64,000 nt of DNA, from NCBI GenBank assembly GCA_963924565.1, contig OZ004612.1:6882001-6946000 (forward strand), read 5' to 3'. Under the pieces are notes generated by a model. It saw nothing but the letters and a program-made list of their open reading frames with translations. It did no database searches and was not told the origin of the DNA. The position numbers and the translations under genes were made by a program. Below are positions 19,258 to 54,466 of this stretch, in pieces; within the stretch, counting starts at the first letter, position 1; every line of letters begins with the position of its first letter. The DNA comes from Ascidiella aspersa. Lineage: Eukaryota.

Positions 19258-22200
19258 ATGACAAGACGAAAGATGGCAGGAATACCAATTTTATTCTTGT
19301 TGTTTTTGTCGGAATTTGGAAGTAAAGCAGTTTTAGGACTTGGTGAGTTAAAGTTCTACTGGGTTAAAATGTTTTTTAATCGTTTTAGCACTATGGGTTT
19401 CAACACTCCTAATAAACACAACTGTGAACAAAACGCAACATATTTATTCTATCATAACCTTTATATCTACAAATATCAACTTTTTTTTATTTAGATCGGT
19501 CAGAAGTGTGCAATGGTAGATCGCCAGCAATTGGTAACCGAATATAGTTTTATTAGCTTTGATTTTACATAAAGGCAATGCGTGCCTAAATGATTGATTA
19601 ACTGCAAAACTACTGGTTTAAAGATAATTGTTTTACCACGTGTAAAGCGTAAAAAAATGCAAATATTGTTACAGATGCACCTGAAGAGGCACTAAAATTC
19701 TTTGAGAATCAATCTCTGCTTCATCTTAGCTACTGCCAATGTCAATGTAAGTTTTTGTGGGCTTTATATTTTGTTGCAACCGTATCAAGGTATTGTCAAG
19801 GTCTTTTTAAACAAACTATAACGGAGAAAGTTTAAACCAGCACCGATTAAATGTCGATTAGGCTAGTGTCAAACCACAGAACAAATCAGCATAAAATAGA
19901 CAGTTTGTTTATATTTTTGCTTGCATCGGGTCTTTTTATTTCTCCACTGATTTTAACTAACCTTCTAAAGGAGGGTACTATACACTTACAGGCTGACTAC
20001 TGTTGTTTCACGTGTAACTAGATGTTTTTATCAAAATTACTTGGTCAATACACTCTTCGTTGAACAAAACTTGCTCAGCTAAAAATCGCTTTAGTTTGCA
20101 AGAATACAGTTAAATGAGACTTATCTAATAGCATTGTTTCTTGGAAGCGTTAATTCCCCCCAACGTTGTTAATATAAATTCCAACAGCTATAGTACTGCT
20201 CATCCTTAAAACTTATTACCTGCTTATGTCGCAGCACAATCAACCAACGCTAACGTAACAAAGCTGTTCGCCATCTTTGAAACTTATGAAACACACAACA
20301 CAGCCCAAGCGAAATACCAAAGCCGTGATTCCGAATTGGCCAAACTAGAAAGTTCAGCTGATGGAAGTACACTGAAGTGTCACATTCAAAGGCGACGTTA
20401 TGACTTTGGCTGGTCGATTTCGCCTATAATTGCAATAATATTGCACTGATGAAAATTCCGCGAATAGGGGGTAGAAGCGTTAATAAAATTTGGCTGGACG
20501 AACGATTTCACAATTGAAACAATTCCTGGCAGCAACAGTATTTATAACTTGTTTATGTCGCAGCTCTATCAACCAACGCTAACGTAACAAAGCTATTCGC
20601 CATCTTTGAAATTACTAAATCACACGACATAGCCCAAGCGAAATGCCAAAGCCGGGATTCCGAATTGGCCAAACTAGAAAGTTCAGCTGATGGAAGTACA
20701 CTGAAGTGTCTCATGGATTTGCAAAGTGGAATACACTTCTGGATAGGTGAGTTCAGGACAATAAGACCGAAAACTGAAACATTCGATTTATTAGTTTAAT
20801 ATGAAACGTTATTTGTAAAACTTTAATTATTTTGGAGCAAAATGGTTGAAGTTGTAGAAATACTTTATTAAGAACATTAAGGCAATATAGATATAGGTAG
20901 GCTATCATTTTAAACGTTTCGAATAACTCTTTATTTATTTATTTTTAGCATAATGAAAAGAAGTTTATATATAATGCTATTCTAAGTATATATATATATA
21001 TATATATATATATCAACAGGGTGATATGGCCACCGTACTATCTGACTCCACTTAATCGAAACCAAACAAACTGCCATTGCATTTCAAAGTGCGTACTGTC
21101 AGGTCGCTTAAAGATTTACTGTACATTCGAAAAATTCAGCCATAACTCCGCTTTTAATAAAACAGCTTACAGCGCGGTATTACGCGTCTCGCCAGTAAGG
21201 CGTGCATTTGCTCGACCCACCAGGCAAGGAAAATAGAATCGAGGTGAAATATCTAACACTTTACCAGGCATACACGCTATAATTACAAGCACAAACAGAC
21301 AAGTGTCGATCGCTTTCTACATATACTTCTGATATACTGTTTTAATTATTTCAATGCAGGGTTGAAGTGTGACAATAATGCGATGCAGGGGTGTACGGAT
21401 AAAAGCAGTTATAATTGGATGGACGGTTCTTCCATATCCTGGGGCAACTGGAAAAGTAATCAGCCCGACCATTACAACGAGAAATGCGTTGCAAGCACGT
21501 CTTCTGGGTGGAATAACGCGATATGTTCGACCCCGTTTTATTATTCTTGCTCCAAAGGTATACAGAATAATAGCGCAATGCAACAATATTTAAACACATG
21601 TCATTATAAATCTTTGATGCTACAGATTTGCAATCTACAACAATAACCACAGCAGCTACAACTGCCACAACTAAACCAACAACAACAACAACAACAACAA
21701 CTACGAATACTAAAACAAGACCAACGGCAACACCTACAACTACAACATCAATAACAAGACGTTCGATTGCAGAAACAGCACTATCTACGACTAAAACAAA
21801 AATGGAAACACATACGACGACAACAAGGACATCAACAACAGCAACACCAGCGAAAACAACAATAAAACCTACGACTAGCACAACAACAAGTCCCACAACA
21901 TCCATGAATTCCCCCAGCACAAAAGTTGACACAATTTCACGAGCGACAATGCAATTGACACGCTCAAGTTTATTCGAAACACAAAATGGAACGACATACG
22001 CCATAAGCACAACAACAGAACCAAAGAAACCAGCTCTGGCCGAAACGCAAACAACAGGCGACATTTTTGTTCCAGGTAAGTCAATTTTGTTTCTAACTTC
22101 CGCGCATAATAACGTCCAACGTGAAAAAATACTATTGGCAGAAAAATCGGGTTGAAACGTTTTACTCACTCAACATTCTAGGTCAATGTCAGCTTTGACC

Positions 22201-25183
22201 TTTTTAATCTTAATGTTGCGGAAGCAAATAACATAATATATATTCCACCTAAATAGCGTTCCAAAACGACTTTAAGTTTTCATTATAGATTGGGATCAAA
22301 TCGTGGACGACTGTGCCATTCGTAAGCTACAATTCACCTTGACTGTTAGAGTGTTTATTTATTTTTTAAGTAAATAAGTAAATATTGATTCGGAATGTTT
22401 ACAACAGATACGAAATTATTTTTGAAAATAGTTTGCCCTAGAAAAAATCTCAATATATTAGAGCGGATGTTTTTTTGCCTGTTAAAATATGGCATCAACG
22501 ACAATATTACGCTTTTTTTGTATTTTACGGGTTTGCGAATGGGGATACTTGTATTTCGGAATAATAAATACTATAAAATTTATATGAAGAACAGAGTAAA
22601 TGTTATATACAGAATTCAATCTGACAAGGCTAGCGGCGTCTTTAAACCACGGTCCGTCCATCTCGGACAATATAAACTCGTTCGAAAGCAACCTCAGCAT
22701 GCATCATGAAGGCAATTATTCCTTGCAAAACAACCTTACACAAGTCAGCGTACAAGTTGTGGTGAAACATGTAACCTCAAACGGTGGAACAGTCGAGTCC
22801 GGTTTGGTCGATTTTGGAAAATCCTCTGTAAAAGCTGCCTTTCAGGTTGCCGCTAATTCCAGTGTGGCTATCGTAATGTTTCAAGTGGTCGTTAACAAAT
22901 CAACGCCATGTAAACTTGTCACCACCGATCAATCAAAGCCTAACACGCTTTACGCCGAAGTAAGTCCCCAGCTTTTCATTGGTGTGTCAGGCTACTATAT
23001 CACAACTTATGAAAAGATTATGGGCTCTGTTGCATTTTCGCGGAAAGTTACCGACGATGAACAGAAGTCGCGCCAGGTTTGTGAAAATAATGTAATTTCC
23101 TCGGCTAACCTAGGCTTAGAAAATGTGGAATGGGCTTGCGCTTTCATCGATCAATCTTCCACTTATTCTACCACTGGATGTCGCAGTAAACTAATAGGGG
23201 ATCGGGTCCACTGCGAATGTGATCACCTCACCGTGCTCTCTATTCTGCTTTCAATGAAAACAGCCGCTATATCAAGTGGAGTAAAGGTAAGCGAGTGGCA
23301 ATTCTATAGTTACAGGAATTTTTCCTACGTTGACAATCCTGATAAAACGCATAGAAAAAGTAAATCAAAAACGAATCGGGGATTAAGTTAAATTAATGGT
23401 ACTCTGATGCAATTTTAAGTTTTTAGAGATATTTTTCTTGCTAAATAACTCAAAAATGGATTCCCAAAGACATTGCGATGAACATCGTTCGTTTTTCATT
23501 GGTGAGTAATTGTTCTTTGCTCTTTCAGATCCTCTCGTATGTTTGCGAGTCGATCTCGATCTGCTTCCTCGTGCTCAGCTTCGTTCTATTATTACGTCAT
23601 AAGCGCCAGGTCGCGAGCGACCGGACCCTCATCCAGATCTGCGTCGTCTTCTCCCTCCTGCTCCTCCACGTCGCCAATCTCTTCCAGGATGCAGCGATCC
23701 TCAAAGAAGTCGGATGTGTTTTCCTCTCTGCGAGCATCCACTTCTTCTTACTAGCATCAGGTAAGGTTAAAACGATAGCATGGTCGTCATGTAACGCGTC
23801 CATATGTCGCATTGCCTTTCATCTAATAACTTAAAAATTAACAAATTATATTTTGGAAAAAATAGCAGCAACTAACAGGCATTTACTCTGTTCAAATTCT
23901 CACAGAAATAATGTTTGCACAGAACAATCGTCATGTATTGTCTATACTTAACTTTGTGATAATTACATTTTTATTTCCAGTTTGAAACAAATTTCGTTTT
24001 AATTAAACTTTATAGTACTTGAAAAAATAATTTATCTTTTACTGTTCCGAAATTAGTAGCTTGTCTTTTTGTTGTTTTACAGTTTTCTGGTTTACGATCG
24101 ACGGAGTCCGAATGACAATGGCCATGACGAACCCGATTGGATTTCAGGTCCAAGACTCCCAAAAGCGATCAAAGGTGTTCTTGGTGGTCGGTTGGCTTAT
24201 CGCGGCAATTCTGGTTGGATCGGCGCTCGCCGCAGGTCTTCCCACAGGAAAATATATGAGGGCCAATGCCAACCTCATGACACAGCCAGGAGGAAGCAAA
24301 TTCGACAGATGCTGGCTGGATCCTGACACCAACGTGTTTATTCTCACTGTTATCGTGCCGATCGCGATTTGTCTTGTGGTCAACTTCCTCTTTGCTCTCA
24401 TTGGTTCATTTGTCCTCCTTTCCTCCAGGAAGAAAAAAAAGCGAAGAAGTCCGGGGGAAATGGATCAAGACGCGAAGACGTTTTTCCGCGCCTTCTTTTT
24501 CTTGATGTTGGTTCTTGGAACAACTTGGGTTCTTGGATTTTTTACAGGTAAAATTTGCGCATTTTCAAGAAACAAATTTAAAGACATTACAACACTTTTC
24601 AAAAATAATTATAGGATTTAAAAAAAAATACAATCACTCTGCCTCTTTTGAAGATAATTATACATGTCAACAGCATAAATGCCAGGTAAAATGCAACAAT
24701 GAAAAATATTAAAAAAATTTGCCTTATTATTTGTCTAACCAGATTGTTAATGCTGCGCATAAAAAAATTAAAATAATTCTTTTTAGTACAACATAGCGAT
24801 TTTTAGAACTTTTCAGTATGAAATGCAATTCAAAGACGATCGATGGATTTGTAGCATTTCATGACTTTGTTGCAAACCTAAACATTTTTCTTTCTTTCGC
24901 CACTTTTCTCTTTTTTGTATTTTAAGTAACCTGTAGCATAAATGTTGTTTTTAATTTCAGTCTCTCTAAGCCGTACACAACCTAATAAGTCTAGCGTAAA
25001 ATTGAAGATATTTTTGATCCAGGTCTCGGAGACGAGGGGACGTCAGAAGTGATGACGTACATCCACACGCTGGTGAATGGGCTTCAGGGATTGGCAGTGT
25101 TCTATTGCTACTGCGTCAAGAATGACGTCATTCGCAAGAAAATATCCTGTGTAGGAAAAACTGCCTGGGTTCCAAACCAATAA
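19258..25183 (+). CDS. Adhesion GPCR copy 1: signal peptide - C-type lectin - Thr-rich stalk - GAIN/GPS - 7TM
   Basis: Phase-consistent exons 19258-19342, 19495-19533, 19675-19746, 20564-20746, 21360-21557, 21626-22075, 22613-23286, 23529-23760, 24083-24547, 25023-25183. CTL motifs AQAKC..FWIG, W.DG, QPD, EKCV, WNN; GPS CECDHL/TVLSILL; secretin-like 7TM motifs (CWL, LGTTW, NGLQG). Confidence 0.9.
20235..20449 (+). other. Truncated tandem duplicate of the first C-type lectin exon
   Basis: 20221-20381 is near-identical to 20551-20710, including the acceptor. It has Cys->Tyr, lacks FWIG and the donor, and runs to TGA at 20447. Confidence 0.8.
20987..21013. repeat. (TA)n microsatellite
   Basis: Direct inspection; intronic in copy 1. 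Confidence 0.95.
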
Positions 25184-25462
25184 ACTTCAAGCGTCAATAA
25201 CCTAACCCAGCAAACTTCCCGTACTTAAGATACATCCAAATACAACTGTTTTCTTATCAGCTCTATCCACGTGTATATAGTTTGGCAATTTTCAGCTGTA
25301 AAAATTCGTGTAACAATATTTGCTTGATTTGTTACAACGAGTTAGATTTAAAATTAATCTCTGTATCCTTCCATTTTCTCAACAATCCATTTCTATTATC
25401 GTTTGTCAATTTTCAGCATTGTTATACACAGGTATTTAAAAATGTATATATAGCATTTAGCG

Positions 25463-25783
25463 CAGTGGTTCTTAACCTTATTAAACTGCCGAACTCCTAT
25501 GTTATTCTGCAAGCTTTCGTCGAACCCATCATTTTGACTCGGTATTTGTTTTTTCCTCCCAGCAGTTAAAACTGGTCATAATCAAATTATAAACTTGCAT
25601 TTAGATAGATTAAATTGGCTAAACTTCCAATTTATAACGCTACATGACACCTTGGCACATACAAGAGATTCGAATTTAGCTTGAACTAACAGTGTTTATG
25701 CTTTAGAGGACGTTCTGGCCGAACCCTTGAAACCGCTGCGTCGAACCCCAAGGGTTCGATCGAACCCTGGTTAAGAACAACTG
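25463..25783. mobile_element. hAT-like MITE downstream of aGPCR copy 1
   Basis: TIRs cagtggttcttaacc / ggttaagaacaactg; flanks atttagcg / ctttagcg (7/8 TSD); absent from the paralogous flank of copy 2 (~39850). Confidence 0.9.
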
Positions 25784-26519
25784 CTTTAGCGTGTCCACGT
25801 CAATCATTTAAAAATTAAGCACTGTTTAAGTGATGACGCTAATAATAATGCTTTACCAATTATGAAACTGCAGTGTTATGTTTTATTTTTTTTTGTCCAA
25901 TAGAGTCGCTAATATTGGTATGCTTATCTCCATGAACATTTGTTAAGCCAGTAAAACATACGTGCTAAAATGATATAAGTAAGGAGGATATATTAGTGAA
26001 TTCATGGTTAACTTAAGTGACGTATAAACTGCCAATCGGTAAATAAATCGATTTTTAGCCAAGTGAGGGCCATGAAATTTTGTTCCCGGCGCTGGTATCC
26101 TGATGAATAAAACGCAAAGAATTATAAGGGGTTTATCAAGTCGTAACGAAATTAATCTTTCGAAATAACAGTGTATACACCGCTTTGGCTTCTTTACCTT
26201 AAAGGTACCTAGACTCCATTACATGGATAACACACAGAAGGTTTCTTAAGTCTATACTATTTTATGAGGACAACTTATAAAGATATCTTTAAATATTTCA
26301 TGCTTAAACTGGTCCACGCGAAACACAATTTTTTTTTTCGCTTTTGTTCATCGGTAAAAATATTTTGTGAGCTTTCTGCACATCGAAAAACAGAGTTGAC
26401 TATTCAGCAACCAAGTATCGAACGGCGAAACGAGCAGTGCGTGGAAAATAAGCGTAAGAAGAGAACGGTTTACTTTGTGTACAATAAGTATGTGGGAAAT
26501 TGCACCACTGCTACTAGCA

Positions 26520-30707: not shown

Positions 30708-33700
30708 ATGTTCTTTACCTTGGTTTGGATTTCACTTGCATCGTTGCAAATCAAGGTTTCTGCCAACTGTAAGTTTAAACTTTAGCCAAATCTTAATATT
30801 AATATATTTGAAACCGGGTTGTTTTATTGTAAATGTTCATCTTTTCTGTATTTTTGTCTTTGCTGTAAATTAATTTCGTTGGTAGTCATAGAAATTTTAA
30901 GGGAACAACATATCTATGTTTGCTGGAAAAATAGGGGTTTCTAAACTTCTCCTAACCTCTGAACAAGCTATGACAAATGTTAACGCGCTGGTGCTCTAAT
31001 GCAGATTGCTTAGTTGACATTCTGTACGTGGTCGATAGTTCCGGGTCGAAAAGCCCGGGTAATTTCTCGACGATTAAAAATGTCCTCTTAAACACCTCCG
31101 ATCTTCTGGAACCGGTCTTTGGTACAAAGCTGCAAGTCGGCATTCTGCAGTATGGAGACACCAGTGGGTCTGGGTAAGCATAACGGTTAATTACAATGGT
31201 TTTAACTACAATCTGGCGACAGTCTCATGGCTAAAATGATGCTGCTTGCCGTGCGTATATTTTGTCAGTATGGTAAGACATTCAGTGAGCAATTCACATT
31301 GACAATATAACAAAGGTTTTATTACGACAGGTTTAAGACTTTGTTTAGGCTCGTTATAAACGCATGGAATATGTGATTTACCATGCGATAGAGAACTTGA
31401 AGTAAATGTTCGACATACCAAATGACGCCATTACTATGCTCAACAAGCATATTAGATGAAACTGAAAAAGTCAAATGTGTTTTATATTCAGATTAGTTAC
31501 CAAAAAAAATATTTAGCGTTAATTAAGAGCTATCTCCATTTGTCAACCTTTTATTTGATAAATTTACCTTTTTTCAATGTTGAGTGCTCCATGTTGGACA
31601 CAAAGTGAGAAAAACACAACAAATTAAAATGGCTATTTACTCGTACCGCGACAGTAAAATTCTTTAGAATTTAAACACACCATGGGTGTTCGACAGACCA
31701 ACGGAATCAGTCGATGAGTTATGAATATTTATGAAAATCAGGGAAGGAAAACAACTAGTATATCCTTTTGTATGGGAGGCCAAATAACAAAGGGCTCGCG
31801 AGCCGCATGCGGTTGTTTAATCAGTTTTATTTTACGTGCCTAACGTTTTGCCTATTTTAACTACTTTAATGCAAAATTGTTTTGCGCTTCACGAAAAATT
31901 TCGGTTACTCTTTATCAGGTTTTTGAATTTTTTCGTTTGGAATAAACACATGCGTCTCATGGCGGTATAAGTCTAAAGGGCGAAAACATTTGTCGCCAAA
32001 ATAAGGGATTGATATTTATTTTTGCCATGTGTTTGGTTTGCCTAATTGCGGTTAATCAATCAAAAATTGTGGCTCTTGATCCCTGATGGTCAAATCCTGC
32101 CCTATTGATACAGAAAAGGCATTGAAAAAACCTGAAGTTCTCCAGTCGAGAAGTCTCCTAACATACAACCGCATTAGCAGCCCTAATTTTGCCTTTTTTT
32201 ATAAAATTTGTAGTGAAACCAGCATTACATACCAGTATATAAGCAAATCCAGTTCTGTAATGACTATTTCTAAAATACCACATTTATACGTATTTATCAC
32301 TGCGGAATAATATGAAAATATCCTTAATCTCTTCACGAAGATGGTTGTGTTGCGAAGGTCAGAGAACATGTTTCTCGTTTTAGTCAAATAGTATTTGTAA
32401 CTTAATCCAATATTACCTGAGCCCGTCGAAATTGAAAAACCGACTACTAATGGTAAATAGGCAATTAAGGTTAGATTATCGCTTTTCACTAATGACTACT
32501 GTATTCATGGTTTTGATTAAATAAGAACTATAAATTTTCATTACATTATTTACCAGGCAACTATTTGGCTGAGCAGTGACGTTCGTTTATTTTGTCACAT
32601 TATTCAGGCGGCCTAACACCACCAATGACCGGGTGGATAAAACAAACAAATTTATTAAACGATTCTACCAATCCTTTATATTAGAAAGTAAAAACGGAAA
32701 GCAAAGGCGCATTGTGTTCAAAAATATCAGCAACAAATCCTAATTACAGCTGCATTATAATTTAGTCCCAAATTTGCATCGTTAATTCCCTATTACTACA
32801 CGACGCCCTTGACACTGGGTCAATGCAACAGCACAACCTGCTACCGGGAAGTAATAAATACAAGGATGTTTTACTATCGTTCATCAAGAACTTTGACTTT
32901 AACTGCATCAGCAATAGAAAGATCTGTAAAGGTGAGAACCAATTTCTTACAACAAATTAACATAAAACGTAAAAAATAAATTAACATAAAACGTGAAAAA
33001 TACTAAACAAAATGAAACACTTATAGTAGAGTTAAGACGGATCGTAAAGTTCCACTAAATTAGCAGGGAACATTGACAATTTTTATTGCGAACTACAGAT
33101 CTGGTGTACGCCTTAATCAAGTATCTTATCACTGGTGTTTGTAAACTCTACCTATATGATGTCAAACTACTTTTGTAGTTTATTTTGCTTTTGTACATTA
33201 CTGGCAAGAGGCCGACAGAGCGAAAAAAGAGCGCGATTGTTGGGTAGGCTATAGAAACGATGCAAAAAATACATCGTCTTTCCACATACAAAAAAATGTA
33301 TTAGTTATGAAACACTTTTTTATTTGTCAAGGTTGAGTTTCCTAAAAGCAAACGTAGTAGTTCTGCAAATAAAATATTGATCCTCATCACAGATGAAGAG
33401 GCGACCGATAAAGGGAACTTGATGAAAAGGTACAGCTATTTGTTCAGTTTGTGATTTATTTCGGTCTGTGGTTTGTCGGTATTCTATGAGTGAAAGTAGA
33501 TTTTTTAAGTAAGCTTAGGAAACCTAAGTTTATCAGCTGAACGGTTGATTTAAATGCATTTATAAAGATGGCGATATCGTCTGGCAAGACATGACTTGAT
33601 AACAACATCCATTTTCTCCCGGTATGGCGAATGTAAATAAATTATGATATCGGAACGCCTTTACTGACCTTTCCTGTTTAATTTCACCTCTACATGTGGC

Positions 33701-36700
33701 TATGTAATAATGATTTTATGGCATCTTGCCTTAGCTACAACCTTACTGAAGCCAACAACATTACTGTGTACGCCGTTGGTGTCGGAAATGTATCTTTACC
33801 GGATCTACGTATCAGCGCGAACGGAGGAGCGACGAACGAAGGAGTTTACAACATTTCCGGCTTTACGAAGCTCAACCAAGTGATAAGAACAATTATCGGG
33901 AACATTGTGGCCGACTGCATTTCGAGTGAGTTTTAGTTGGCAATGCCATCATTTGTTCATTTTATCGGGCGGATCTTGCCGTTATTTTTGCGTGTTCCTT
34001 ATGTGTTGCATCACAAAAAACAGCTTGTAAAAAATAACTTTTAGCTTGTATGACCGAAGGGCCTACCCTGCTTTGTGGACCATTTTTGTGTAAAAAACAA
34101 ACAAGATTCAATGTCTTAGAGTGGGTTAAAAACCAATGAGTTAGAACTAAAATAAAACCGTCTTTAAACAAATTATTAGTAATTGACTTCTAATTCAACA
34201 AATAAAAAACATGTTTTTTGAATGATTTAAATTATTTCATACTACTTTTAGCAACAGTAGCACAATACTCCAATTTGATTGCTACGATGAAATTTAACCA
34301 AACATTTCTTTTTCCAAATGCAATAAAACGCAAAACAGTTACAACAGCAGCTCCTGCAACTTTGGTTCAAGCTACAGAAATACATTCAGTAGCACCTCAA
34401 GAATGGAATACCAGCACTACTGCAACAGGTTATGAGTTTGCTTTACTAAGGTTACTGGTAGCTGGTTTAATTAACTGAGAGTCCAAAAGAAAATAATATT
34501 ACAATTTAAAAAAATTCCCAAAATGTTTAAACGGAAAATATCAAACATATTAGTGATAGTAAAACAAGTAAAGTATTCTCAATCTTACATATTTTGGGAC
34601 TAACCGAAACCTAAAAAGCAATACCACAACAAAAAAGCTTATAGCAAGGTAATGGTGATCATAAAGAAGTGGAACAAACATCGGTGATATTTTTTAACTG
34701 GTAAAAGCACATCAATGGCGTTTGTAGTAGACATTACGTTTAGCCCAAAACATTATATTATCTAATGCTTTGGGTGCAGGTCGTATTCTGAAACTATATG
34801 GGAAGCATAACCTCACTGTTCGACTATAGACCACATGTAAAAATATTGTTCGTTCATGTTTGTTTAGCAAGTTTTAACATCAAATTCGGTTAAAAAAATT
34901 AAAAAGAAAAAGCGGAGGATAAAATTTAGCAATCTTCGATTCAAACAGGAAGTTCTTGTCACATGATAAGTTACATCGAAAGTTTAAGTACCCATATACC
35001 ATATTTTTGGCGTCTTGACAAAGAGTGAGCCACCTCAATGGAGCAGCATCCAATCTATAACAAGTTACGACAAGTTATTCTCTAGTATAAGTTAAATAAA
35101 GAGGTAGTTAAGCAAACGGCCTCCGACGTACATTGCCAAGTTGAACTACATGGCGATCCATGTGAGGTAAATGGAAATTTAACATAATACCAGAGTAATT
35201 TTGCTAAAACTGCTTATCATAAGCCAATACGCAGCACTTAATCTTGGCAAAAGTATGAGTTTGTTTTGAAAAGCCTTCACAAACAAACTATTTCGCAATT
35301 ACCGATTCTGATCACGCTTTATAATTTCACAGTGAACAATGAAGTCTGAACTTCGCAAAAGCGATGAATTTATTTTGATTTGTTTGCTGTTACACGGAAG
35401 CTGCGTTCAAACCAGTAACCCGTTAAACGAAATTTGCTAACTGGTAAAACCGCTGCAATAAGCGCGACATTTTGCGAACTCCTCTTTGATTTTCCATAGC
35501 TAAACATATAGCAAGAAATATTTAAACCTAAAAGTCTTAATTTGGAACGTTGCACTATGTGGCGCTGTACACGTTAGATCAGTATAAATTTCATAGCATG
35601 TAACTCTTTTCTTGCATTTAGTGGGCAGCACAACTCCAAAGGCGTTTGTCGTCTTTTGACTGTTAGCCGTTAATAGGAGTTAATTAATCCCTGCAATAAG
35701 ACTATCGAATTACAACATAAGGATAAGGCCAGTGTGGAAGCGGCATTGATTGACTTAAGCATGGTGTAAATGAGTATGACGACTATTTGGGAGAAATATA
35801 AAATTCAATTCTTCATCTTGTGAGCTTAAATTATTTTTAAGCTTACTTTGTACAAAGTTTGTTATACAATGTAAAAGTTGTAACCCCGAAAGCACGTTGT
35901 GAGTTACCAAACTACATCTTAGGTAAAAAAGATCATGAATATGAAAACGTTAAGTGGTAATTGACATATGATCCTAGAGTGATGTCACGGATTCGTCATA
36001 GGACTAAGAAGTACGCAAATAATGTTTAAAAAACATGACACTTTTTTTAAACCTAAACGTCATCGCGTGGCTCAAAAAGTGCGATAAATAAAACATAAAA
36101 AATATATAAACTGTGATGTCTTTTTTGGCATTTTTTGATGATCGGAGAACATGTAGCATAGCTTGCAAAAACAAAAGCGTTGATCGCCCATTGACTGTTT
36201 GCCGCTGATTGTGTTTTAAATGGCTTATTTAAATTATCCCCACAATAAGACTATAACACGTACACAAATAAGACTATAACACCAAGAATACGACCTGTGT
36301 GTTTGAAGCCGCATGTTACTGTCGATGGTTAAAATAAGATTGTGACTATTTATAATGCAACCCAAATGCACTGTTGTTTCTAAAATGGTGCAATTAAATA
36401 TTCTACTATAGCATACAACGACTGGAAAAGCGTATAACACACTTTGAAGTAATGAAGAACCTTAGTATTAAGCCAAAATGTAATCCTGGTACTAAACTGC
36501 GCCTAACGTATGATAAATCCCCTTTTAATAACAAATTACTCACTTCTGTTGAAACTGTTGCAATATACAAAAAAGATATTACGAATCTTCTAACATTTAC
36601 TTCGTAACACACTTTAAGGTTACACTGTAACAATTGGCCTAAATCACTATCAAATTATTCTCGAAAAGGTTTGTTGTAAGATATCCGTTAAAGTTTCCTG

Positions 36701-44339: not shown

Positions 44340-44875
44340 CTTAAGACAAAAAAGTCTTCGTATTCTGCTTAGTAAACAGAATAATACAGCAGTTACCGTA
44401 AATTAGGAAAGCCGTTTGAATAAAGTTGTTGACTGACATCAAGCAATATCCACAAAATAACTGCCATTTAACATCAACTAACCCATGAATCATACCTTTA
44501 AAGCGCCAAAACCCGGTACATATAGCATGTTTGGTCAAGCTTGCCCGGAAATCAAGTATTGCCTAAAAGCTATAGGAGGTTACCTGTTCAATCCAACAAC
44601 GTCCGTTGGGGGGGGGAGGGGGGGGGGTCACTAAAAGCGGCGCAAAGTGACTTACTGTGAAACAAACATTTTAAACTAGATTTAGCATCGATTTAGCATC
44701 GATTTAGTTTTTAAAACACGATTATGTTTTAAAGAGGCATGAAATTACTTAATCTACAGTGTTTAATCGAAATAATATTTGCCCGGTTTCTTATACTCTA
44801 TACGTGTAAAACGACACTTGCTATAGTCTATATGTACTAAATAATCTTCTCAGAATTGTCATTATCAGTAGTTTG
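44340..44875 (-). pseudogene. Internally deleted duplicate of the 5' region of aGPCR copy 3
   Basis: 44400-44606 matches 53568-53776 (intron plus end of Sushi exon); 44629-44872 matches 54514-54742. They are joined by G9-A-G10 at 44608-44627. Confidence 0.85.
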
Positions 44876-45511
44876 ATCAGGGTGGGAAACACTAGGACAT
44901 GTCCCCCAAACAATGTTTCTTGCCACATTTTACAATATCAAAGCAAACTGTTTTGCGGTTTGCGCGAATATTTCGGCCTTGTTGTTGTTTACGAATTTTC
45001 GCCTTTCGTATTGCGCTTCTACATTATTGCAAAAATGTATAGCGACGGTTTTAACAAATCTCTTTATTTCCATCAATTGAGGAAATTAAATCATGACGAC
45101 ATTAAATTCAATTTTCGTTTTTATTTTCAGACAGCGTGGCGCATCTGTAGAGAGCGAGTGTGTAATAACCCAACTTTTCGCGCAGTGTGCGCTGTCTGTT
45201 TGGAATGGTTCACCAACTCATATACACATGAATGGCCATCGAATGACTCACAATATCGGAGGCCTGGAATTCTATTTAAGCTGGGCAACGCCGGGTATTT
45301 CGTCTATCTATAGTATAAATTAAAAAAAATTTCATTCGAAAGTTCTAATGCTCGGTTATTTTGTTTAAAATACAACTATCACCTTACTTTGTTTTTTATG
45401 CGTAATATTCACAATGATTCCATAAAATAAATGTAGGCCTACCGGTCAGTCAGAAATTTAGTTGTTTTAATTTTTATTTTGGTATTAGGCACTCCACAAG
45501 ACTATATAGAC

Positions 45512-48247: not shown

Positions 48248-48880
48248 TCATTTATTTGTGTTTGGAATCGTCAACCTTTCCACGTCAATCGATACGCTGC
48301 TCGTACGACGGGAAAATCTGGAGCTGGAAAACATCGCTGCGATCACTGAATGGAGCTCCGCCTTGTTCACAACATTCCGTTGCTGCTGCTCGTGATCGCT
48401 TGATTCCGCTTCGTCCTGGATATCTTCAGAGGTATTTATACCCGCCTCTTGTTCAAAGTTGTCAGAACGGCGTTTTCTATTTTCTTGCTGAAGAAGCAGT
48501 TGATCATTGCTGGGGCTGGGGCTGGGGTGGTGCTGGGGTGGTGCTGGTGCTGGGGCTGGTGCTGGGGATGGGGCTTGGGCTGGTATTTGGTTCGACTTGG
48601 GCTTGGGGCTGGGCTGGGCTGGGGCTGGGGCTGGGGCTGGGGCTGGGGCTGGGGCTGGGGCTGGGGCTGGGGCTGGGGCTGGTATTTGGGATTGGACTTG
48701 GGGCTGAGCTGGGACTTGCGCTGAAGCTGGGGCTGGGACTGGGGATGTGGCGGGGACGGGGGCGCTTCTATTTCGAACCTTATTCACTTTCTCACCTTCG
48801 TCTTGTTCAAAGGTTTCAGTGCGTCGCGGCGTACATTCTTCTGAAGACTCAGTTGACGAGCTCGAAAGATTTTCACGCAA
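48248..48880 (-). other. Out-of-frame ~205-aa Ser/Glu- and Pro-Ala-rich C-terminal tail of copy 3
   Basis: The open frame overlaps the last exon. Its GAG TCT TCA (ESS) aligns with the ESS of copy 2, implying an indel near 48870. Confidence 0.7.
48600..48682. repeat. (GGGGCT)n hexamer repeat encoding (Pro-Ala)n on the minus strand
   Basis: Direct inspection; degenerate copies extend over ~48510-48760. Confidence 0.95.
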
Positions 48881-51800
48881 ACAAAACTTTGTTGAATTAC
48901 GTCATTCTTGAGGCAGTAGCAATAGAACACCGCCAGTCCCTGCAGTCCATTAACCAGCGTGTGGATATACGTCATCACTTCTGACGTCACCTCGTCACCA
49001 ATGTCTAGGAAAACAAAAAAATAATGATATGAAATTAAACAAACGTAAGGGTAAAGGCCTTGTCACCAAATGCCATTGTTCTTGCTAATCATTATCTCAA
49101 TCTAAAATTTTATTCGAAACAAATTTGCAGCGTTGTAATAAAGACTTTGTAACTTACGGGGACCTTTAACAATTTTTCTATTTTATATTAGTTCGATGAG
49201 TGGCCATGACTTTTTGGAATTCTTACCAGTGAAAAATCCAAGAACCCAAGTCGTTCCAAGAACCAGCATCAAGAAAAAGAAGGCGCCGACAAACGTTTTC
49301 GCGTCTTGATTTCTTTCCTCTGGACTTCTTCGTTTCTTATTCTTCCTGGAGGAAAGAAGTACAAAGGCACCAATGAGAGCAAAGATGACGTTGACCACCA
49401 GGCAAATCGCGATCGGCACGATCACAGTAAAAATAAACACGTTGGTGACAGGATCCAGCCAGCATTTGGCGAATTTGCTTCCCCCTTTTTGTGCCACGGT
49501 ATTGGGATTGACTTTCATGTAGTATCCTGTAGGAAGACCAGCGGCGAGCGCTGATACAACTAGAAGTGCCGGGATGAGCCAACCGACCACCAAGAACAAC
49601 TTGGATCGCTTCTGAGAGTCTTGAACCTGGAATCCAATCGGGTTCGTCATGGCCATTGTCATTCGGATTCCGTCGATCGTAAACCAGCAGCCTGAAAAAA
49701 ATTATTAAAGCGTTGGTTGTTTGCGACAAACTTAAAAGTAGGAAAAACTGATGGGGCGTAAAGATGAGCGACAGTAAGACAAAAATATCATTCTAAAATA
49801 TAGTTCAGAAACATTAAATTGTCTCCAAGTCAAATCTAATAAAAAAACAAAATAGTAAAACAAATAAATCTATGTCCCGACAGTAACAAATAAATTACTG
49901 TAAAGTAAAACATGGCTGAAAACTAGAAATTCCACAATCCCCAAAAAGGTTATTTGTTATAAACAAAGCAGTTTAGCAGACAGACATTTAATTTTGCAAT
50001 GGAATGTAAGAGCAACAGCAGGCTCTTGAAACACGGCAATATTTTTTACGGTTGCTACCTGATGCTAGTAAGAAGAAGTGGATGCACGCAGAGAGGAAGA
50101 CACATCCGACTTCATTGAGGATCGCAGCATCCTGGAGGAGATTGGCGACGTGGAGGAGCAGGAGGGAGAAGACGACGCAGAGCTGGATGAGGGTCCTGTC
50201 GCTCGCGATTTGGAGCTTATTACGTAACATTAGCACGAAGCTGAGCAGGAGAAAGCAAACCGAAACCGACTCGCAAATGTAAGACAAAACCTGAAATGGC
50301 AAAACCCTGTTAATCACCAGTGAAAATAAAGTTTGACGTTAACCGCACAATTTGTTTTGGTAATATATTTTGTGGAGCTTATTCAAGAACAATATCCCAG
50401 TAAGCCTAAATTAATTCAGAATCATTAATTTAATGAAGGTAATAAAGTCAAAAATAGTTGACAAACAGAATTGCCACTTGCTTACTTTAACTCCAAGTGA
50501 AATAACCTTTGTCTTTATGGAGAGTAGAATAGCGAACACGGTGAGGTGATCACATTCGCAGTAGACTCGATCGCCTATTACTGTACTGCGACATCCAGCG
50601 ATGGAATATGTCGAAGATCGTTCGATGAAAGCGCAAGCCCATTCCACATTTTCTAGGTCTAAGTTAGCCGAGGAAATTACAGTGTTTTCGCACACCTTGC
50701 GCGATATCAGTTCATCGTTGGTAAGTTTCCGTGAAAATGCAATAGAGCCATTCAGCCTGGCGCCAGTTTTTATATCATAGCCTGACACGCCGATGTAAAT
50801 GTTGGGGCTTAGTTCGGCGTAACGTGTGTTGGGCTTTGGTTTATTGGGTGTGACGAAGGTGCATTGCGTTAAGGCTTTGTGAACGACGACTTTGAACATG
50901 ATAATAGCCACTCCGGATTTGCCTGCTTTTCGGAAGGTAGAATTTACCGAGGAATTTGTAAAATTGATCAAACCTGAATGATAAGTTCCGCCTGTTGACG
51001 TAAGACGTTTCACCACAACTTGTACGCTGATGTGCTTGAGGTTATATTCCAATGTATAATTGCCCTTTGTGAGTTGGCTTAGGTCGCTTTCAAACGTGTT
51101 AAGATATTCCAAACCGTTGCGGAAACCTTTTGTGATTTTGATCAGCAAGCTCATGTTTGGTTCGGGTTCTAAAACGAAGACTTCTTAGTATTCCCATTTT
51201 TAGAAAGACTACATGTCGAAAGGCTGTTTTTAAACTTTATTTGAAACTGTATTACTTTCGAAAAGGATGAGAACTATATAGGCTTAATAGGGATTGCTGT
51301 GCATGCATATCTTACTGCACACTGTAGTTTTCATGTGTAACATGGATGTCAATAACCAAGAAAAAGTTGTTACTTGGAAATAAAATAAAATGTTTGCAGA
51401 TTAGGAATAATGTAAAGCATATAGCGATGTTATGTATTACATTGACTTTCAATATTTATTTGGCCAATCTGCAGTCAATGTGGTCGTATCTTAGTGCTAC
51501 AAATTTTGTTGCCAAAATATCGATCATACACAAAATATGCAGCTACTTTCAGTCAGCACTAGAGCAGTGCTCCGCAACTTTTTTCACTTGCGGCACACCA
51601 ACAGAGCTAAAAATATTCGGCGGCACACTTACGAATTATATGAAGATCGACAATAGACAACAAAAGCAAGATTCCAGGCTACCCAGGGAAAATAGGCGAC
51701 TTTTCATTAAACGCGCTGCAGGCGCCGAAAATTTGACGTTACATACTCTTGCATCTTCTGTTTTTACGGTATTCCTAAAACATCATAAGAAGGCCACAGG

Positions 51801-54466
51801 GAATTCAGCCAAAACACCGAAATTAGAACAACATCAACGCCGGTATAAAACACAGTTGGAATAAGTCCTAAACCCGTCAGATAAAGACCTAAATGGCTAG
51901 AAATACACAACATTTTAGCAAACCTTAAACCCAACCCCTTAATTCGTCACTAAGTCTTCTAATAATTCAAACCCTAACTTAATTTCCAACCCCACCCATT
52001 AGGCTGAACAAAACTAACCCCCCAAAAATGAAAAACAACCAATGCGAAATTCGCAGCTCTCCAACTGCGCCCTAATCGCTGTTCAAACTAGAGCGCCCAA
52101 ACGTCGACACCAAAAGAAGCCAGATTGATGACCCCCGATCATTCCATAGCCTCTAACAACATTTTTAGGCATTTTTGTCCATTAGTAGGCCTAATTCTCT
52201 TAAACTTTGAACCTATTCTGACACAAAAACAGGTTTAGGTATTTTTAGGCGATTTTAGATCTTATTCTATTGTGGTTAGAAAACGATTTCTGCATATTAA
52301 TACCTGTGTGATTGATTTAGTTAAGCAACTGTTTTGAAATCCGACTTTCGGCGTTTGACGTAACGTAGATTTTAGTTTTTTTTTTAATTTATAAGGTACA
52401 CCTTGATTATTGCATAAGGGTAAAATGCCTGCCTTAATATATCATTTTCATTCAATTTTACTGTAAACAGTACATTTAAATACATTTAATAAACGCAAGT
52501 AAACATCTCCGGGAACGTCGCGGCACACCTGGCATGGTCTCGGCACACCGGTCGCGGAGCACTGTTATAGAGCAGCGTTAAGTTGCACTAGTACTGGTTT
52601 TACATGTCGTTACGTGTCGTTCATAGAAGCTGGTGCTACGCTATGGTTGAAATTAACTGTCATGTCCATATGCTCCTTCATTAAGACGCTAAAAATATGG
52701 TGCATGGTTACTACAAAAGACCCTATAAGCGTTTTCTGTAATGGAAACAGTTTTGTCTATTGTCCGAAGCTGAGTTCCTAATGTCTTTCTTTTGTTACAA
52801 TTGAAAACAATGATAAGACGTAGTAAACAAGTCTGGACAAAAAACTCAAACAAGCCTCGACTATAGGACTTTTACCATGTGTTCTGATGCTAACAGCTAG
52901 ACCAGGGGTGGGCAATTATTTTTAACCGCGGGCCGCATGAGAAACTTAAAATGCTGTGGCAGGCCAAGTCAAAAATAATATCTCAAATACACGCAATATG
53001 ACGTCTTTCTCTCACGGGATAAATATAGACTACATATATTGTTGATATATTGGCATTTATCGAGTTGTTGGGCGCGTTGACCTAAAAGTTAAGAATAAAA
53101 TACGCAAAAAATTTTCACAGAAAACGTTCAATGTTTTTTTTTGCTTTTTAAGGCTTTGAGTTGGCCTACCGATATGTTACTTGCGGTACAACGGCCTTAT
53201 TGCAACGATGGTATCAATCGGGTTCATTTACTAAACTTAAGACAAACATGTGCCGGCCAGGCTAACATTCGGCCTTGTCAGAAATGTTGGAACAATATGA
53301 CGAGCACGTTTTCAGCTTGTGCAAAAATGATGCTGACATTTAAAGTATGCCTAATTGTTTACACATTCTGTGCCCTATTAAACCTGAGGTCTCGTTTTTG
53401 TCATTCTTGTTTTTCATATTTTTTTGAAGTTGTATATATATTGTTTATTTTTCAATAGAAATTTATTTTTGGACGGCATAAAACCACAGTCTTCTAACAT
53501 AAGACCCGCTAAAAATGGTTGTATTGTTTCTGCATATAGTAAACAAATTTGGACAGCAGTTTCAATAAATTAGGACAGCGGTTTGAATAAAGTAGTTGAC
53601 TGACAACGAGCAATACACACAAAATAACTGATATTTAAACATGAAACCATGAATTATACCTTTATGTTAAAGACCCCAAACCCTGTACATATAGCCTTAT
53701 GCATTGTCAAGCTGGCCCGGAAATCAAATTTTGCCTAAAAGCTAGGAGGTTACCTGTACAATCCAAAAACGTCCGTGTCCACGTATTTGTCCCAACACAT
53801 ACCGCCGTGTTCTCACCGGCTGTTGAGGCGAATCCAGGGGCACAAGATGCTGTTACCTGCGTGTTGCCAACGTAACCAGGAAAGGCGGGAAGGAAAGGCG
53901 TAACCGATCCCCCATTGCTCACAGTCGGAGCCGCGTCGCAATAAAACGCTACGGCAAATTATAATGTATTTTATTGGGTGAACGATTGACATTGAGTGTG
54001 TACAAATTTTGTAACTAAATCAGTATGTCAAAGTCAAATCATTTGTGAAAATGGACAAGCCAAGTCTAAAAATCATGTAAAAAAAGGAACGTTTGTGAAA
54101 ATGCTGATTACAAGGGGAAATTGGCTTAAAACTTAAAAATCAGTAATTTTAGTTAATGCAGTACTGCAGTATACAGAGAAAATGTGATTGGTACTAAAAG
54201 TTAAAAAATAGGCGACAACAATCCAGCAACAACTGGAATGTATTCCATTTCCTACTTGTATAAACAAAAGAGAAACGAACTTTGTATTGCATTAACGGAG
54301 CCGCCTTTATAATAAATCCAATTGACATGTAAAATTCTTATATACGTTTAAACATTAGGGCAAACTGAGGCTTACTTTCGTTGTGAACAGATTCCGTGAA
54401 GCCGCTTTGTGCTTTTGCAATTGCAAGTGTAAGGAGAATGTTCGCAGCAATATTCATGAGATGCAT
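48784..54466 (-). CDS. Adhesion GPCR copy 3: signal peptide - Sushi/CCP - GAIN/GPS - 7TM
   Basis: Exons 54466-54376, 53948-53754 (C..P..G...C.PGF...C....W....C), 51168-50486, 50290-50059, 49691-49227, 49004-48784. TM exon sizes (232 and 465 bp) equal those of copies 1 and 2; GPS CECDHL/TVFAILL. Confidence 0.87.
51565..52564. mobile_element. hAT-like MITE (same family as 8686-9300, inverted) carrying a family-A insertion
   Basis: TIRs cagtgctccgc / gcggagcactg; subterminal ccgggaacgtcgcgg shared with 8708-8722; flanks cactagag / ttatagag. Confidence 0.8.

What the first reader, a model, noticed from the sequence alone, without database searches (positions are those of the whole stretch)
19258..54466. 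Cassette-like adhesion GPCR cluster: one GAIN-7TM module, three unrelated sensor heads (C-type lectin, VWA, Sushi)
Seen: three neighbouring paralogs have the same GAIN/7TM exon layout but entirely different ectodomains. Every head block (CTL exons, VWA block, Sushi exon, stalks) begins and ends in intron phase 1 and joins a phase-1 GAIN acceptor. Known: phase 1-1 modules are the classic exon-shuffling substrate; CTL, VWA and CCP are glycan, adhesion and complement recognition folds; to my knowledge none is a human aGPCR ectodomain. Inference: a lineage-specific receptor family diversifying ligand recognition by head swapping on a fixed signalling chassis, plausibly for immune or substrate sensing.
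Basis: partly seen in the sequence, partly recalled or inferred. Interest (0 to 1): 0.85.

Follow-up and report, generated by a model that had tools for sequence, protein, structure and literature searches.

The report
Adhesion GPCR cluster with swapped heads
Three neighbouring sea-squirt receptor genes share one signalling body (GAIN domain plus seven membrane helices) but carry a lectin, a VWA or a Sushi head, and the DNA shows that at least one head was pasted on recently by recombination in the intron just before the body: a clean example of a known process, exon shuffling.

Summary
The window (C6:6882001-6946000 of a 309-Mb tunicate genome) carries three adhesion-GPCR paralogs. They assemble into open reading frames of 815, 818 and 628 codons with all-GT-AG introns. 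The GAIN-7TM exon layout is the same in all three. The heads are Lectin_C plus a Thr-rich stalk, VWA plus a short stalk, and Sushi. Every head block is phase 1-1 and meets a phase-1 GAIN acceptor.

They belong to a family of at least 21 members. The TM4-6 exon is 78-100% identical, and the family sits on three chromosomes. Its heads also include Ig, fn3 and other lectins.

Head swapping is shown at DNA level for copy 1. Its promoter region, signal exon, introns, lectin exons and stalk are 73-84% identical and collinear with the head of a distant aGPCR (chassis 29% identical) about 180 kb away. That homology ends at window 22346. Homology to its nearest chassis relatives starts at 22550. Copies 2 and 3 also lose homology to their chassis relatives inside the same intron.

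No RNA evidence could be obtained, and function is untested.

This scan has noted related cases in the same genome: s1-801566 (lectin-aGPCR exon shuffling) and s1-801668 (a lectin-mucin-GAIN array). This is a new variant of a known kind, of moderate interest.

The parts
19258..19342 (+). Copy 1 exon 1: start codon and signal peptide; donor in phase 1
   Evidence: A hydrophobic N-terminus is seen.
20564..20746 (+). Copy 1 C-type lectin exon a (phase 1-1)
   Evidence: Lectin_C profile 2-47, 15.6-19.1 bits. Phases.
21360..21557 (+). Copy 1 C-type lectin exon b (phase 1-1); carries a QPD motif, and WNN in place of WND
   Evidence: Lectin_C profile 51-107, 23.2 bits, above the cut-off. Sequence read.
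21626..22075 (+). Copy 1 mucin-like stalk exon (41% Thr; phase 1-1)
22347..22549 (+). Recombination junction of copy 1, inside the intron before the GAIN exon. To its left the DNA is homologous to the head of a distant aGPCR; to its right it is homologous to the nearest chassis relatives.
   Evidence: homology to C6:6720662-6724597(-) ends at window 22346; homology of 89-90% to C6:6772214-, 6775025- and 6789227- starts at window 22550.
22613..23286 (+). Copy 1 GAIN/GPS exon (phase 1-0), with the H-L-T cleavage triad and a hydrophobic tethered-agonist segment
   Evidence: GPS 25.7 bits. AF2 model pLDDT 79. The top nine Foldseek hits are GAIN domains, E as low as 2e-6.
23529..25183 (+). Copy 1 7TM exons: 23529-23760 (0-1), 24083-24547 (1-1), 25023-25183 (1-stop)
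   Evidence: 7tm_2 60.4 bits. Junctions.
30708..30768 (+). Copy 2 exon 1: signal peptide; donor in phase 1
   Evidence: It is conserved with the paralog just upstream of the window.
31005..33925 (+). Copy 2 VWA block in four exons: 31005-31173 (1-2), 32766-32931 (2-0), 33332-33429 (0-2), 33735-33925 (2-1). The MIDAS residues (DxSxS, a later Thr, a later Asp) are present.
   Evidence: VWA 27.6 and 14.9 bits. Exons conserved in three paralogs with omega 0.35-0.51. Phases.
34252..34428 (+). Copy 2 short Ser/Thr stalk exon (phase 1-1)
   Evidence: Conserved in L018 and L010. Phases.
37274..39615 (+). Copy 2 chassis: GAIN 37274-37965 (1-0); TM exons 38232-38463, 38754-39218 and 39410-39615
   Evidence: GPS 29.7 bits and 7tm_2 60.5 bits.
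54376..54466 (-). Copy 3 exon 1: signal peptide; donor in phase 1
53754..53948 (-). Copy 3 Sushi/CCP exon (phase 1-1), with four Cys and the conserved Trp
   Evidence: Sushi 31.3 bits. Phases. Only the exon itself is homologous (77-79% nt) to CCP-repeat genes on C2 and at C6:6.39 Mb.
48784..51168 (-). Copy 3 chassis: GAIN 51168-50486 (1-0); TM exons 50290-50059, 49691-49227 and 49004-48784
   Evidence: GPS 26.4 bits and 7tm_2 67.2 bits. It is 78% identical, introns included, to paralog L010 from window 51507 to 49527.
20240..20389 (+). Decayed tandem duplicate of lectin exon a. It keeps the acceptor but has lost a conserved Cys and the donor region.
   Evidence: 80% identity over residues 2-51.

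Best explanation
These are three members of a recently expanded, ascidian-lineage family of adhesion GPCRs.

Gene structure. Each gene is built from two cassettes.
- A 5' cassette holds the promoter, a signal-peptide exon and head exons: a C-type lectin with a mucin stalk, a VWA domain with a short stalk, or a Sushi domain.
- A 3' cassette holds one GAIN/GPS exon and three 7TM exons.
- One phase-1 intron joins them.

How the family diversified. The 5' cassette has been replaced repeatedly by DNA recombination inside that intron. Unequal crossing-over between tandem paralogs also occurs. Because all extracellular modules are phase 1-1, any head stays in frame.

How the receptor works (inferred from family knowledge, not shown here). 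The head binds an extracellular partner: a glycan through the QPD-type lectin, a metal-dependent ligand through the VWA MIDAS site, or a protein through the CCP domain. The GAIN domain cleaves itself at H-L|T. Force on the N-terminal fragment, or its removal, exposes the tethered agonist, which activates the 7TM and a G protein.
For: Shown:
- Complete open models with GT-AG introns and the stated phases.
- Domain hits exon by exon.
- GAIN fold confirmed and matched by sequence to ADGRG1, ADGRF1 and ADGRG3 GAIN domains.
- 21 paralogs whose TM4-6 exon is 78-100% identical, on C6, C8 and C2.
- Other heads on the same chassis: VWA, a different lectin, and Ig/fn3/lectin combinations.
- Paralogs are young and under purifying selection. 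The 7TM has median dS 0.32 and omega about 0.2-0.28. The GAIN exon has omega 0.3-0.45. The VWA head has omega 0.35-0.51.
- Copy 1's whole 5' cassette, including upstream DNA and introns, is collinear and 73-84% identical with C6:6720662-6724597(-). That is the head region of an aGPCR whose TM4-6 exon is only 29% identical.
- The junction in copy 1 lies at window 22347-22549.
- Copy 3 and its chassis sister L010 share 78% identity through GAIN, introns and TM exons, but their heads are unrelated.
- Copy 2 loses homology to the C8 paralogs in the same intron, between window 34428 and 35072.
- A neighbouring gene (L012) is a 5'-L002 / 3'-L004 hybrid that sits between its two parents. This is the classic product of unequal crossing-over.
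- VWA exons lie 5-8 kb upstream of chassis exons, on the same strand, at four family-A loci (copy 2, L018, L004, L010) and at about three further places beside more distant chassis (C6:26.7 Mb, C2:7.80 Mb). This argues that head and chassis form one transcription unit.
Against: - There is no transcript evidence.
- The Sushi head of copy 3 is a single case, separated from the GAIN exon by a 2.6-kb intron. Small exons could be missing between heads and GAIN exons.
- The 3' ends are unverified.
- The GPS lacks the two conserved Trp of the canonical motif, so self-cleavage is uncertain.
- Ligands, G-protein coupling and any immune role are pure inference.
- The 7TM data do not statistically reject the GAIN-tree clades (AU p 0.12-0.19). 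A general GAIN/7TM mosaic across the family is therefore not established beyond the L012 case.
Confidence: 0.8

Rival explanations
1. Some heads are not part of the receptor genes. The lectin, VWA or Sushi exons would then belong to separate small secreted-protein genes, or be dead relics, that merely lie upstream of headless GAIN-7TM genes.
For: - There is no RNA evidence.
- Most ascidian relatives in the library show only GPS + 7tm_2, as reported for 21 of 30 Ciona aGPCRs (PMC2396169).
- An orphan lectin + Thr-rich cassette lies upstream of L010's own signal peptide and VWA head, so head cassettes without a direct chassis do exist.
- Copy 3's Sushi head is a singleton.
Against: - None of the head exons has an in-frame stop or a membrane anchor, and all end in phase-1 donors that fit the GAIN acceptor.
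- The GAIN exons begin at an acceptor mid-codon, with no start codon or signal peptide of their own.
- The VWA-stalk-GAIN-7TM order and spacing recur at several loci under purifying selection.
- The lectin-stalk cassette sits in the same position upstream of a different chassis at its source locus.
Confidence: 0.12
2. The different heads reflect old, vertically inherited architectures. Three ancient aGPCR families would happen to sit side by side, and their 7TM exons would have been made alike secondarily by gene conversion. No head would have been swapped.
For: - 7TM synonymous divergence is about half that of the GAIN exon (median 0.32 vs 0.64).
- 7TM GC3 is 0.63, against 0.47 in the GAIN exon and 0.37 GC genome-wide. 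This is compatible with conversion.
- One chassis-internal recombinant exists.
Against: - The dS ratio is roughly constant at all depths, which fits a slower synonymous rate better than episodic homogenisation.
- The GAIN exon tree gives the same sister pairs as the 7TM tree where the latter is resolved: copy 3 + L010 at 100/99.
- Intron homology accompanies the chassis between copy 3 and L010 and between copy 1, L002 and L012, and it accompanies the head between copy 1 and the distant donor.
- This is the signature of a moved 5' cassette, not of a converted 3' part.
Confidence: 0.05
3. The array is largely non-functional: recent segmental duplicates decaying into pseudogenes.
For: - One C8 copy lacks GAIN and TM1-3 exons in 18 kb (P8a).
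- One C8 copy has a frame break in its GAIN exon (P8e).
- Relics exist: a pseudo-exon in copy 1 and a head-flank fragment at window 44370-44860.
Against: - All three window copies have fully open models.
- Omega is well below 1 in the 7TM, GAIN and VWA exons.
- Key residues are invariant across 14 paralogs: four GPS Cys, H-L-T, and the TM6 Trp motif.
Confidence: 0.03

Closest known systems
Ascidian-specific 'unclassified Adhesion' GPCRs of Ciona intestinalis (Kamesh et al. 2008, PMC2396169) and RefSeq/ENA 'ADGRD1-like' proteins of Phallusia, Ciona, Styela and Clavelina
   Same: - They are the closest sequence relatives: TM4-6 is 27-43% identical.
- They have GPS + 7tm_2.
- They are lineage-specific expansions with no vertebrate ortholog.
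   Different: - Most of those proteins show no recognisable head domain.
- Here one tight clade carries lectin, VWA, Sushi, Ig and fn3 heads.
- Only single cases among the relatives have a lectin: Styela Lectin_C and Clavelina SUEL lectin.
Amphioxus adhesion GPCRs with novel N-terminal domains (Nordstrom et al. 2008, PMC2246102)
   Same: - An invertebrate-chordate aGPCR expansion with heads absent from mammalian aGPCRs, including Lectin C-type.
- The authors propose domain shuffling.
   Different: - That paper makes no mention of VWA or Sushi.
- It maps no recombination junction.
- There the heads differ between deep branches, whereas here they differ between paralogs with 7TM dS of about 0.3.
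Vertebrate aGPCR families (ADGRL, ADGRB, ADGRE, ADGRG and others)
   Same: - The GAIN fold.
- H-L-T at the cleavage site, a hydrophobic tethered agonist, and the conserved TM6 and TM7 motifs.
- The presumed mechanism.
   Different: - In metazoan aGPCR families the head architecture normally tracks the 7TM phylogeny (statement in PMC12716839). Here it does not.
- The GAIN is short: about 205 residues before the cleavage site, in one exon, with little of helical subdomain A.
- It lacks the two canonical GPS tryptophans.
Exon shuffling of phase 1-1 extracellular modules (Patthy's rule; established knowledge)
   Same: - Symmetric phase-1 modules (lectin, Sushi, VWA block, stalks) are inserted at a phase-1 intron.
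- The breakpoints are intronic.
   Different: The event is young enough that the donor cassette is still recognisable at 73-84% nucleotide identity, promoter-proximal DNA and introns included. The junction is narrowed to about 200 bp.
Polycystin-1 (PKD1)
   Same: It combines a C-type lectin domain with a GAIN/GPS autoproteolytic domain in one membrane receptor (general knowledge; PMC11458180 listed).
   Different: - It has an 11-TM channel-like body, not a 7tm_2 GPCR.
- It shows no sequence relation to these genes beyond the shared domains.

Membership tests
Adhesion GPCR (class B2) | Secretin-type 7TM core (Pfam 7tm_2) | tested here: met
   - 7tm_2 scores 60.4, 60.5 and 67.2 bits on the TM4-6 exons.
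- Flanking exons cover profile positions 7-91 and 211-250.
- Six strong hydrophobic segments and a weaker seventh follow the GPS.
Adhesion GPCR (class B2) | GAIN domain with GPS motif directly before TM1 | tested here: met
   - GPS scores 25.7-29.7 bits, above the 22.5 cut-off.
- A profile of 14 paralogs hits the ADGRG1, ADGRF1 and ADGRG3 GAIN domains in the PDB.
- The AF2 model (pLDDT 79, pTM 0.75) has nine GAIN structures as its best Foldseek hits, E 2e-6 to 1e-3.
- TM-scores are only 0.34-0.48: this is a short GAIN.
Adhesion GPCR (class B2) | Autoproteolysis at H-L|T/S and a tethered agonist | not testable with these tools
   - H-L-T and four GPS Cys are invariant in 14 paralogs.
- The residues after the Thr are hydrophobic, as in known tethered agonists.
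- The two canonical GPS Trp are replaced.
- Cleavage itself needs a protein experiment.
Adhesion GPCR (class B2) | Signal peptide and adhesive ectodomain on the same polypeptide as the 7TM | tested here: inconclusive
   - Open, phase-consistent joined models exist.
- The same gene order recurs at several loci.
- No transcript evidence was available.
- Joined models were not sent to any database tool; searches were done exon by exon only.
C-type lectin-like domain (copy 1 head) | Lectin_C profile over both halves, the conserved Cys framework, and the Ca/sugar motif | tested here: met
   - Profile positions 2-47 score 15.6-19.1 bits; positions 51-107 score 23.2 bits.
- The framework Cys are present.
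- A QPD (galactose-type) motif is present, but WND reads WNN.
- Sugar binding is therefore plausible, not shown.
VWA domain (copy 2 head) | VWA profile and MIDAS residues | tested here: met
   - The first exon scores 27.6 bits (profile 1-48); the last scores 14.9 bits (profile 128-172).
- The two middle exons gave no Pfam hit alone, but they are conserved in three paralogs and carry the Thr and Asp positions.
- DxSxS is present.
Sushi/CCP domain (copy 3 head) | Sushi profile end to end, four Cys and the Trp, in one phase 1-1 exon | tested here: met
   - Sushi scores 31.3 bits over profile 1-56.
- Residues were read; phases are.
Exon shuffling by intronic recombination | Donor and recipient identifiable, homology including non-coding DNA, breakpoint in an intron, reading phase kept | tested here: met
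   - Copy 1: (donor C6:6720662-6724597, junction at window 22347-22549, phase 1 on both sides).
- Copies 2 and 3: the breakpoint interval is known only from the loss of homology to chassis relatives.
- For the Sushi exon, only exon-level donor relatives were found.

The most novel reading that the evidence does not exclude
The roughly 450-kb C6 region and its satellites on C8 and C2 act as a cassette-built recognition-receptor system. Complete 5' cassettes (promoter, signal peptide, head, stalk) are moved between aGPCR chassis fast enough to give individuals or populations different receptor repertoires. Loci with two head cassettes upstream of one chassis, such as L010 with a lectin-stalk cassette ahead of its own signal-VWA cassette, use them as alternative first cassettes. 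That would resemble the variable-exon/constant-exon layout of clustered protocadherins or UGT1A, and would serve self/non-self, settlement or microbial sensing in an ascidian.
Probability: 0.15. Interest if true: 0.8.

Novelty: new variant of a known kind. Interest (0 to 1): 0.55.

Why it matters
Adhesion GPCR families normally keep their ectodomain architecture along the 7TM tree. Here one young clade (7TM dS about 0.3) carries at least six head types, and one swap can be read directly from the DNA: the donor, the recipient and a junction of about 200 bp.

- This gives a rare, dated, natural example of exon shuffling by intronic recombination.
- It is also a natural chimera series. The same GAIN-7TM body carries lectin, VWA, Sushi, Ig or fn3 heads, which could be used to ask how different heads drive one tethered-agonist receptor.
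- VWA and Sushi heads on aGPCRs were not found in the papers searched.
- The general principle is textbook, and similar lectin-aGPCR shuffling was already noted elsewhere in this genome. The value lies in a clean case and a catalogue, not in a new mechanism.

Tried and rejected
- **Joined models.** The joined spliced models were not sent to any search tool. All database searches were exon by exon, by reference. The joined frames were checked only locally, by coordinates.
- **Genome DNA.** The heads of L002, L012, L021, L004 and the three C2 copies, and the donor gene itself, could not be read. They are known only through the coordinates of search hits.
- **Genome-wide Pfam searches.** Searches for VWA and Sushi saturated at 150 scored candidates and did not reach the cluster. 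One DNA search was swamped by a dispersed repeat and was repeated without it.
- **First AF2 model.** A more diverse alignment fixed this.
- **Family-wide GAIN/7TM mosaic.** AU tests on the 7TM data do not reject the GAIN-tree clades (p 0.12-0.19). I claim chassis-internal recombination only for L012, where a sliding-window comparison shows it directly.
- **Homogenisation of the 7TM by gene conversion.** I considered this as the main cause of the 'fixed chassis' and found it unproven. The dS ratio is roughly constant at all depths.
- **Head-state count.** Counting head-state changes on the trees is uninformative. Five changes for six states is the minimum possible.

Full report
**What is there**

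The window is C6:6882001-6946000 of a 308.6-Mb, 75-contig genome. It has about 37% GC and no gaps. Stop-to-stop frames showed three sets of paralogous exons: copy 1 on the + strand at 19258-25183, copy 2 on the + strand at 30708-39615, and copy 3 on the - strand at 54466-48784.

Pfam scans were run exon by exon, by reference.
- GPS scored 25.7-29.7 bits in all three GAIN exons.
- 7tm_2 scored 60-67 bits in all three TM4-6 exons.
- Copy 1 gave Lectin_C on two exons: 15.6-19.1 bits for profile 2-47 and 23.2 bits for profile 51-107.
- Copy 2 gave VWA on the first and last exons of its block: 27.6 and 14.9 bits.
- Copy 3 gave Sushi, 31.3 bits.

**Gene models and phases**

I read the splice junctions on the sequence. 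I then checked them by coordinates alone.
- Every intron is GT-AG.
- The three joined frames are open from Met to stop: 815, 818 and 628 codons.
- The chassis has the same layout in all copies. The GAIN exon is phase 1-0, and the TM exons are 0-1, 1-1 and 1-stop.
- Signal-peptide exons end in phase 1.
- The two lectin exons, both stalk exons and the Sushi exon are 1-1.
- The VWA domain is split over four exons. Its internal phases are 2, 0, 2, but the block as a whole is 1-1.

The joined models were never sent to a database tool; they were used only locally to check frames.

**The chassis is a real aGPCR body**

- The GAIN exon keeps four Cys and H-L-T invariant in 14 paralogs.
- A profile of it hits the GAIN domains of ADGRG1, ADGRF1, ADGRG3, ADGRD1 and ADGRL3 in the PDB.
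- A first AF2 model from close paralogs failed (pLDDT 35). A second, built with ascidian homologs added, reached pLDDT 79 and pTM 0.75.
- The nine best Foldseek matches of that model are all GAIN structures: BAI3, CD97, CELSR1, latrophilin-1, BAI2, GPR110 and ADGRL3, with E from 2e-6 to 1e-3.
- The domain is short, about 205 residues before the cleavage site, and lacks the two canonical GPS tryptophans. Self-cleavage is therefore inferred, not shown.
- The TM6 and TM7 motifs typical of aGPCRs are present.

**Organism and relatives**

A search of 1.84 billion representative proteins with the TM4-6 exon gave only 59 hits. The best were 42-43% identical, and those whose source I looked up were all ascidian: Phallusia mammillata, Ciona, Clavelina and Styela. 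The genome is therefore an ascidian whose proteins are not in the libraries. Of the 20 longest relatives scanned, 17 showed only GPS + 7tm_2 or 7tm_2 alone and one (P0047) showed neither. One Styela protein has Lectin_C and one Clavelina protein has a SUEL lectin. This matches the Ciona survey, where 21 of 30 aGPCRs had only a GPS (PMC2396169).

**The family is much larger than three genes**

The TM4-6 exon finds 21 copies at 78-100% identity.
- Eleven lie on C6 between 6.748 and 6.932 Mb.
- Eight lie on C8.
- Three lie on C2.
- The next tier is at 49% identity or less.

Where I could read upstream DNA, the heads differ.
- VWA plus stalk is found on L018 and L010. By search hit it is also on L004.
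- L016 carries a different Lectin_C.
- Two C8 copies carry tandem Ig repeats.
- Five C8 copies carry lectin, Ig-like, fn3, fn3 and Ig exons.
- One C8 copy is truncated and one has a frame break.

**Age and constraint**

| Region | Median dS | Omega |
|---|---|---|
| 7TM exons | 0.32 | about 0.2-0.28 |
| GAIN exon | 0.64 | 0.3-0.45 |
| VWA head | not computed | 0.35-0.51 |
| Stalk | not computed | 0.6-1.3 |

The median dS values come and the omega values. The expansion is recent. Constraint relaxes from the membrane outwards.

**Head swapping shown at DNA level**

Copy 1.
- Its lectin exons have their closest relatives at C6:6721526-6722200(-), at 75-79% amino-acid identity.
- A DNA search with window 18800-22620 found collinear homology of 73-84% with C6:6720662-6724597(-). 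It covers about 450 bp upstream of the start codon, exon 1, intron 1, both lectin exons, the stalk exon and about 270 bp of the next intron. It ends at window 22346.
- That region lies about 8 kb upstream, on the same strand, of a chassis whose TM4-6 exon is only 29% identical to copy 1.
- Copy 1's nearest chassis relatives are L002 and L012: the GAIN exon is 88-90% identical, with dS 0.16-0.18. Their homology starts at window 22550, 63 bp before the GAIN exon. They show no match to copy 1's head.
- The junction is thus confined to 22347-22549, inside the phase-1 intron.

Copy 3.
- It is the well-supported sister of L010 in both the GAIN tree and the 7TM tree (100 and 99).
- The two share 78% identity, introns included, from window 51507 to 49527, with patches of homology up to 52844. 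Their heads are Sushi and VWA.
- Only the Sushi exon itself resembles CCP-repeat genes elsewhere: 77-79% nt at C2:12.64-12.72 Mb and C6:6.386 Mb.

Copy 2.
- It and L018 (both VWA) are sister to the C8 Ig/fn3/lectin group in the GAIN tree.
- Homology to a C8 copy runs back to window 35072 and stops before the stalk exon, which ends at 34428.

All three junctions fall in the same intron.

A further discordant case is a VWA first exon that is 69% identical to copy 2's. It sits upstream of a chassis only 33% identical, at C2:7.80 Mb.

**Mechanism of turnover**

A sliding-window comparison of L012 with its neighbours shows a clear switch.
- L012 is 94-98% identical to L002 from the GAIN exon through two introns into the first ~150 nt of the TM4-6 exon.
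- From there on it is 86-97% identical to L004, through the 3' flank.
- It lies between its two parents.

This is the expected duplication product of unequal crossing-over in a tandem array. By contrast, a general GAIN/7TM mosaic across the family is not statistically established (AU p 0.12-0.19).

The copy-1 event joined cassettes of two families that share no intron homology, and the donor lies in the opposite orientation. It was therefore not a simple homologous exchange.

**What is known, and novelty**

- Shuffling of aGPCR ectodomains is an accepted idea. Lectin C-type heads are described in amphioxus (PMC2246102).
- Sponge aGPCRs carry SRCR, Ig and fn3 heads (PMC4302439).
- In metazoan aGPCR families the head architecture is reported to follow the 7TM tree (PMC12716839). 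This clade does not follow that rule.
- I found no mention of Sushi, C-type lectin or von Willebrand domains in a 2026 aGPCR review. I found no mention of VWA or Sushi aGPCR heads in the other papers searched.
- Another agent of this scan reported a lectin-stalk-GPCR fusion made by exon shuffling on another contig of this genome (s1-801566). I did not test it.

**Limits**

- There is no RNA evidence.
- The 3' ends, and possible small exons in the long introns, are unverified.
- Ligand, cleavage, coupling and biological role are all inferred.

**Verdict**

It is a new variant of a known kind, of moderate interest.

Noticed in passing
L012 (C6:6786148-6789606), compared with L002 and L004: L012 is a hybrid gene. 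It is 94-98% identical to L002 from the GAIN exon to about 150 nt into the TM4-6 exon, then 86-97% identical to L004 through the 3' flank. It lies between the two parents. This is an anti-Lepore-like product of unequal crossing-over.
   Followed up: yes
C6:6775025-6775473 (-), outside the window: There is an extra copy of the copy-1-type GAIN exon (89% nt identity). It lies 2.4 kb upstream of L002's own GAIN exon and has no TM4-6 exon beside it. It may be a duplicated exon or a chassis fragment.
   Followed up: no
L047:7370-8402 (-), just left of the window start: An orphan head cassette lies about 2 kb upstream of L010's own signal-peptide exon and VWA head, on the same strand. It holds two Lectin_C-like exons with an EPN motif, about 32% identical to copy 1's lectin, followed by a Thr-rich frame. 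It could be a relic, or an alternative first cassette.
   Followed up: partly
window 20240-20389 (+): A tandem duplicate of copy 1's first lectin exon lies here. It is 80% identical over 50 residues and keeps its acceptor. It has a Cys-to-Tyr change and has lost the 3' end and donor.
   Followed up: yes
window 44370-44860 (-): This fragment is 77-81% identical to two non-adjacent pieces of copy 3's head region. One piece is the DNA upstream of exon 1. The other is the end of the Sushi exon plus the following intron. There is no chassis nearby.
   Followed up: no
window 21004-21322 and about 54767-54942: Two short dispersed repeats, each with at least 40 genomic copies, lie in head introns or flanks. 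One is about 200-300 bp at 84-88% identity. The other is about 176 bp at 89-92% identity.
   Followed up: no
7TM exons of all 20 family members analysed: GC3 is 0.63 in the 7TM exons and 0.47 in the GAIN exon, in a genome of 37% GC. Synonymous divergence in the 7TM is about half that of the GAIN exon at all depths. This could reflect codon selection or GC-biased conversion; it is unresolved.
   Followed up: partly
L033-L036 (C8:22706001-22755000): Two C8 paralogs carry near-identical tandem repeats of about 2.7 kb, each unit holding several Ig-like exons. Heads therefore also grow by internal duplication.
   Followed up: partly
C8 paralog head introns, e.g. L037-L042: A frame of about 120-140 codons resembling a GIY-YIG endonuclease sits in an intron between the two fn3 exons of several C8 copies. 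It was not scanned against Pfam, and a Penelope-like element is only a guess.
   Followed up: no
window 48251-48901 (-): A long open frame rich in Pro-Ala dipeptide repeats overlaps the 3' end of copy 3's last exon in another frame. It could be an alternative C-terminal tail, or just a microsatellite.
   Followed up: no
C6:26.72-26.76 Mb and C2:7.80-7.83 Mb: VWA first exons lie 7-8 kb upstream of more distant aGPCR chassis (33-49% identical in TM4-6), so VWA-headed aGPCRs exist in several subfamilies. The C2 VWA exon is 69% identical to copy 2's, although the chassis is only 33% identical.
   Followed up: partly
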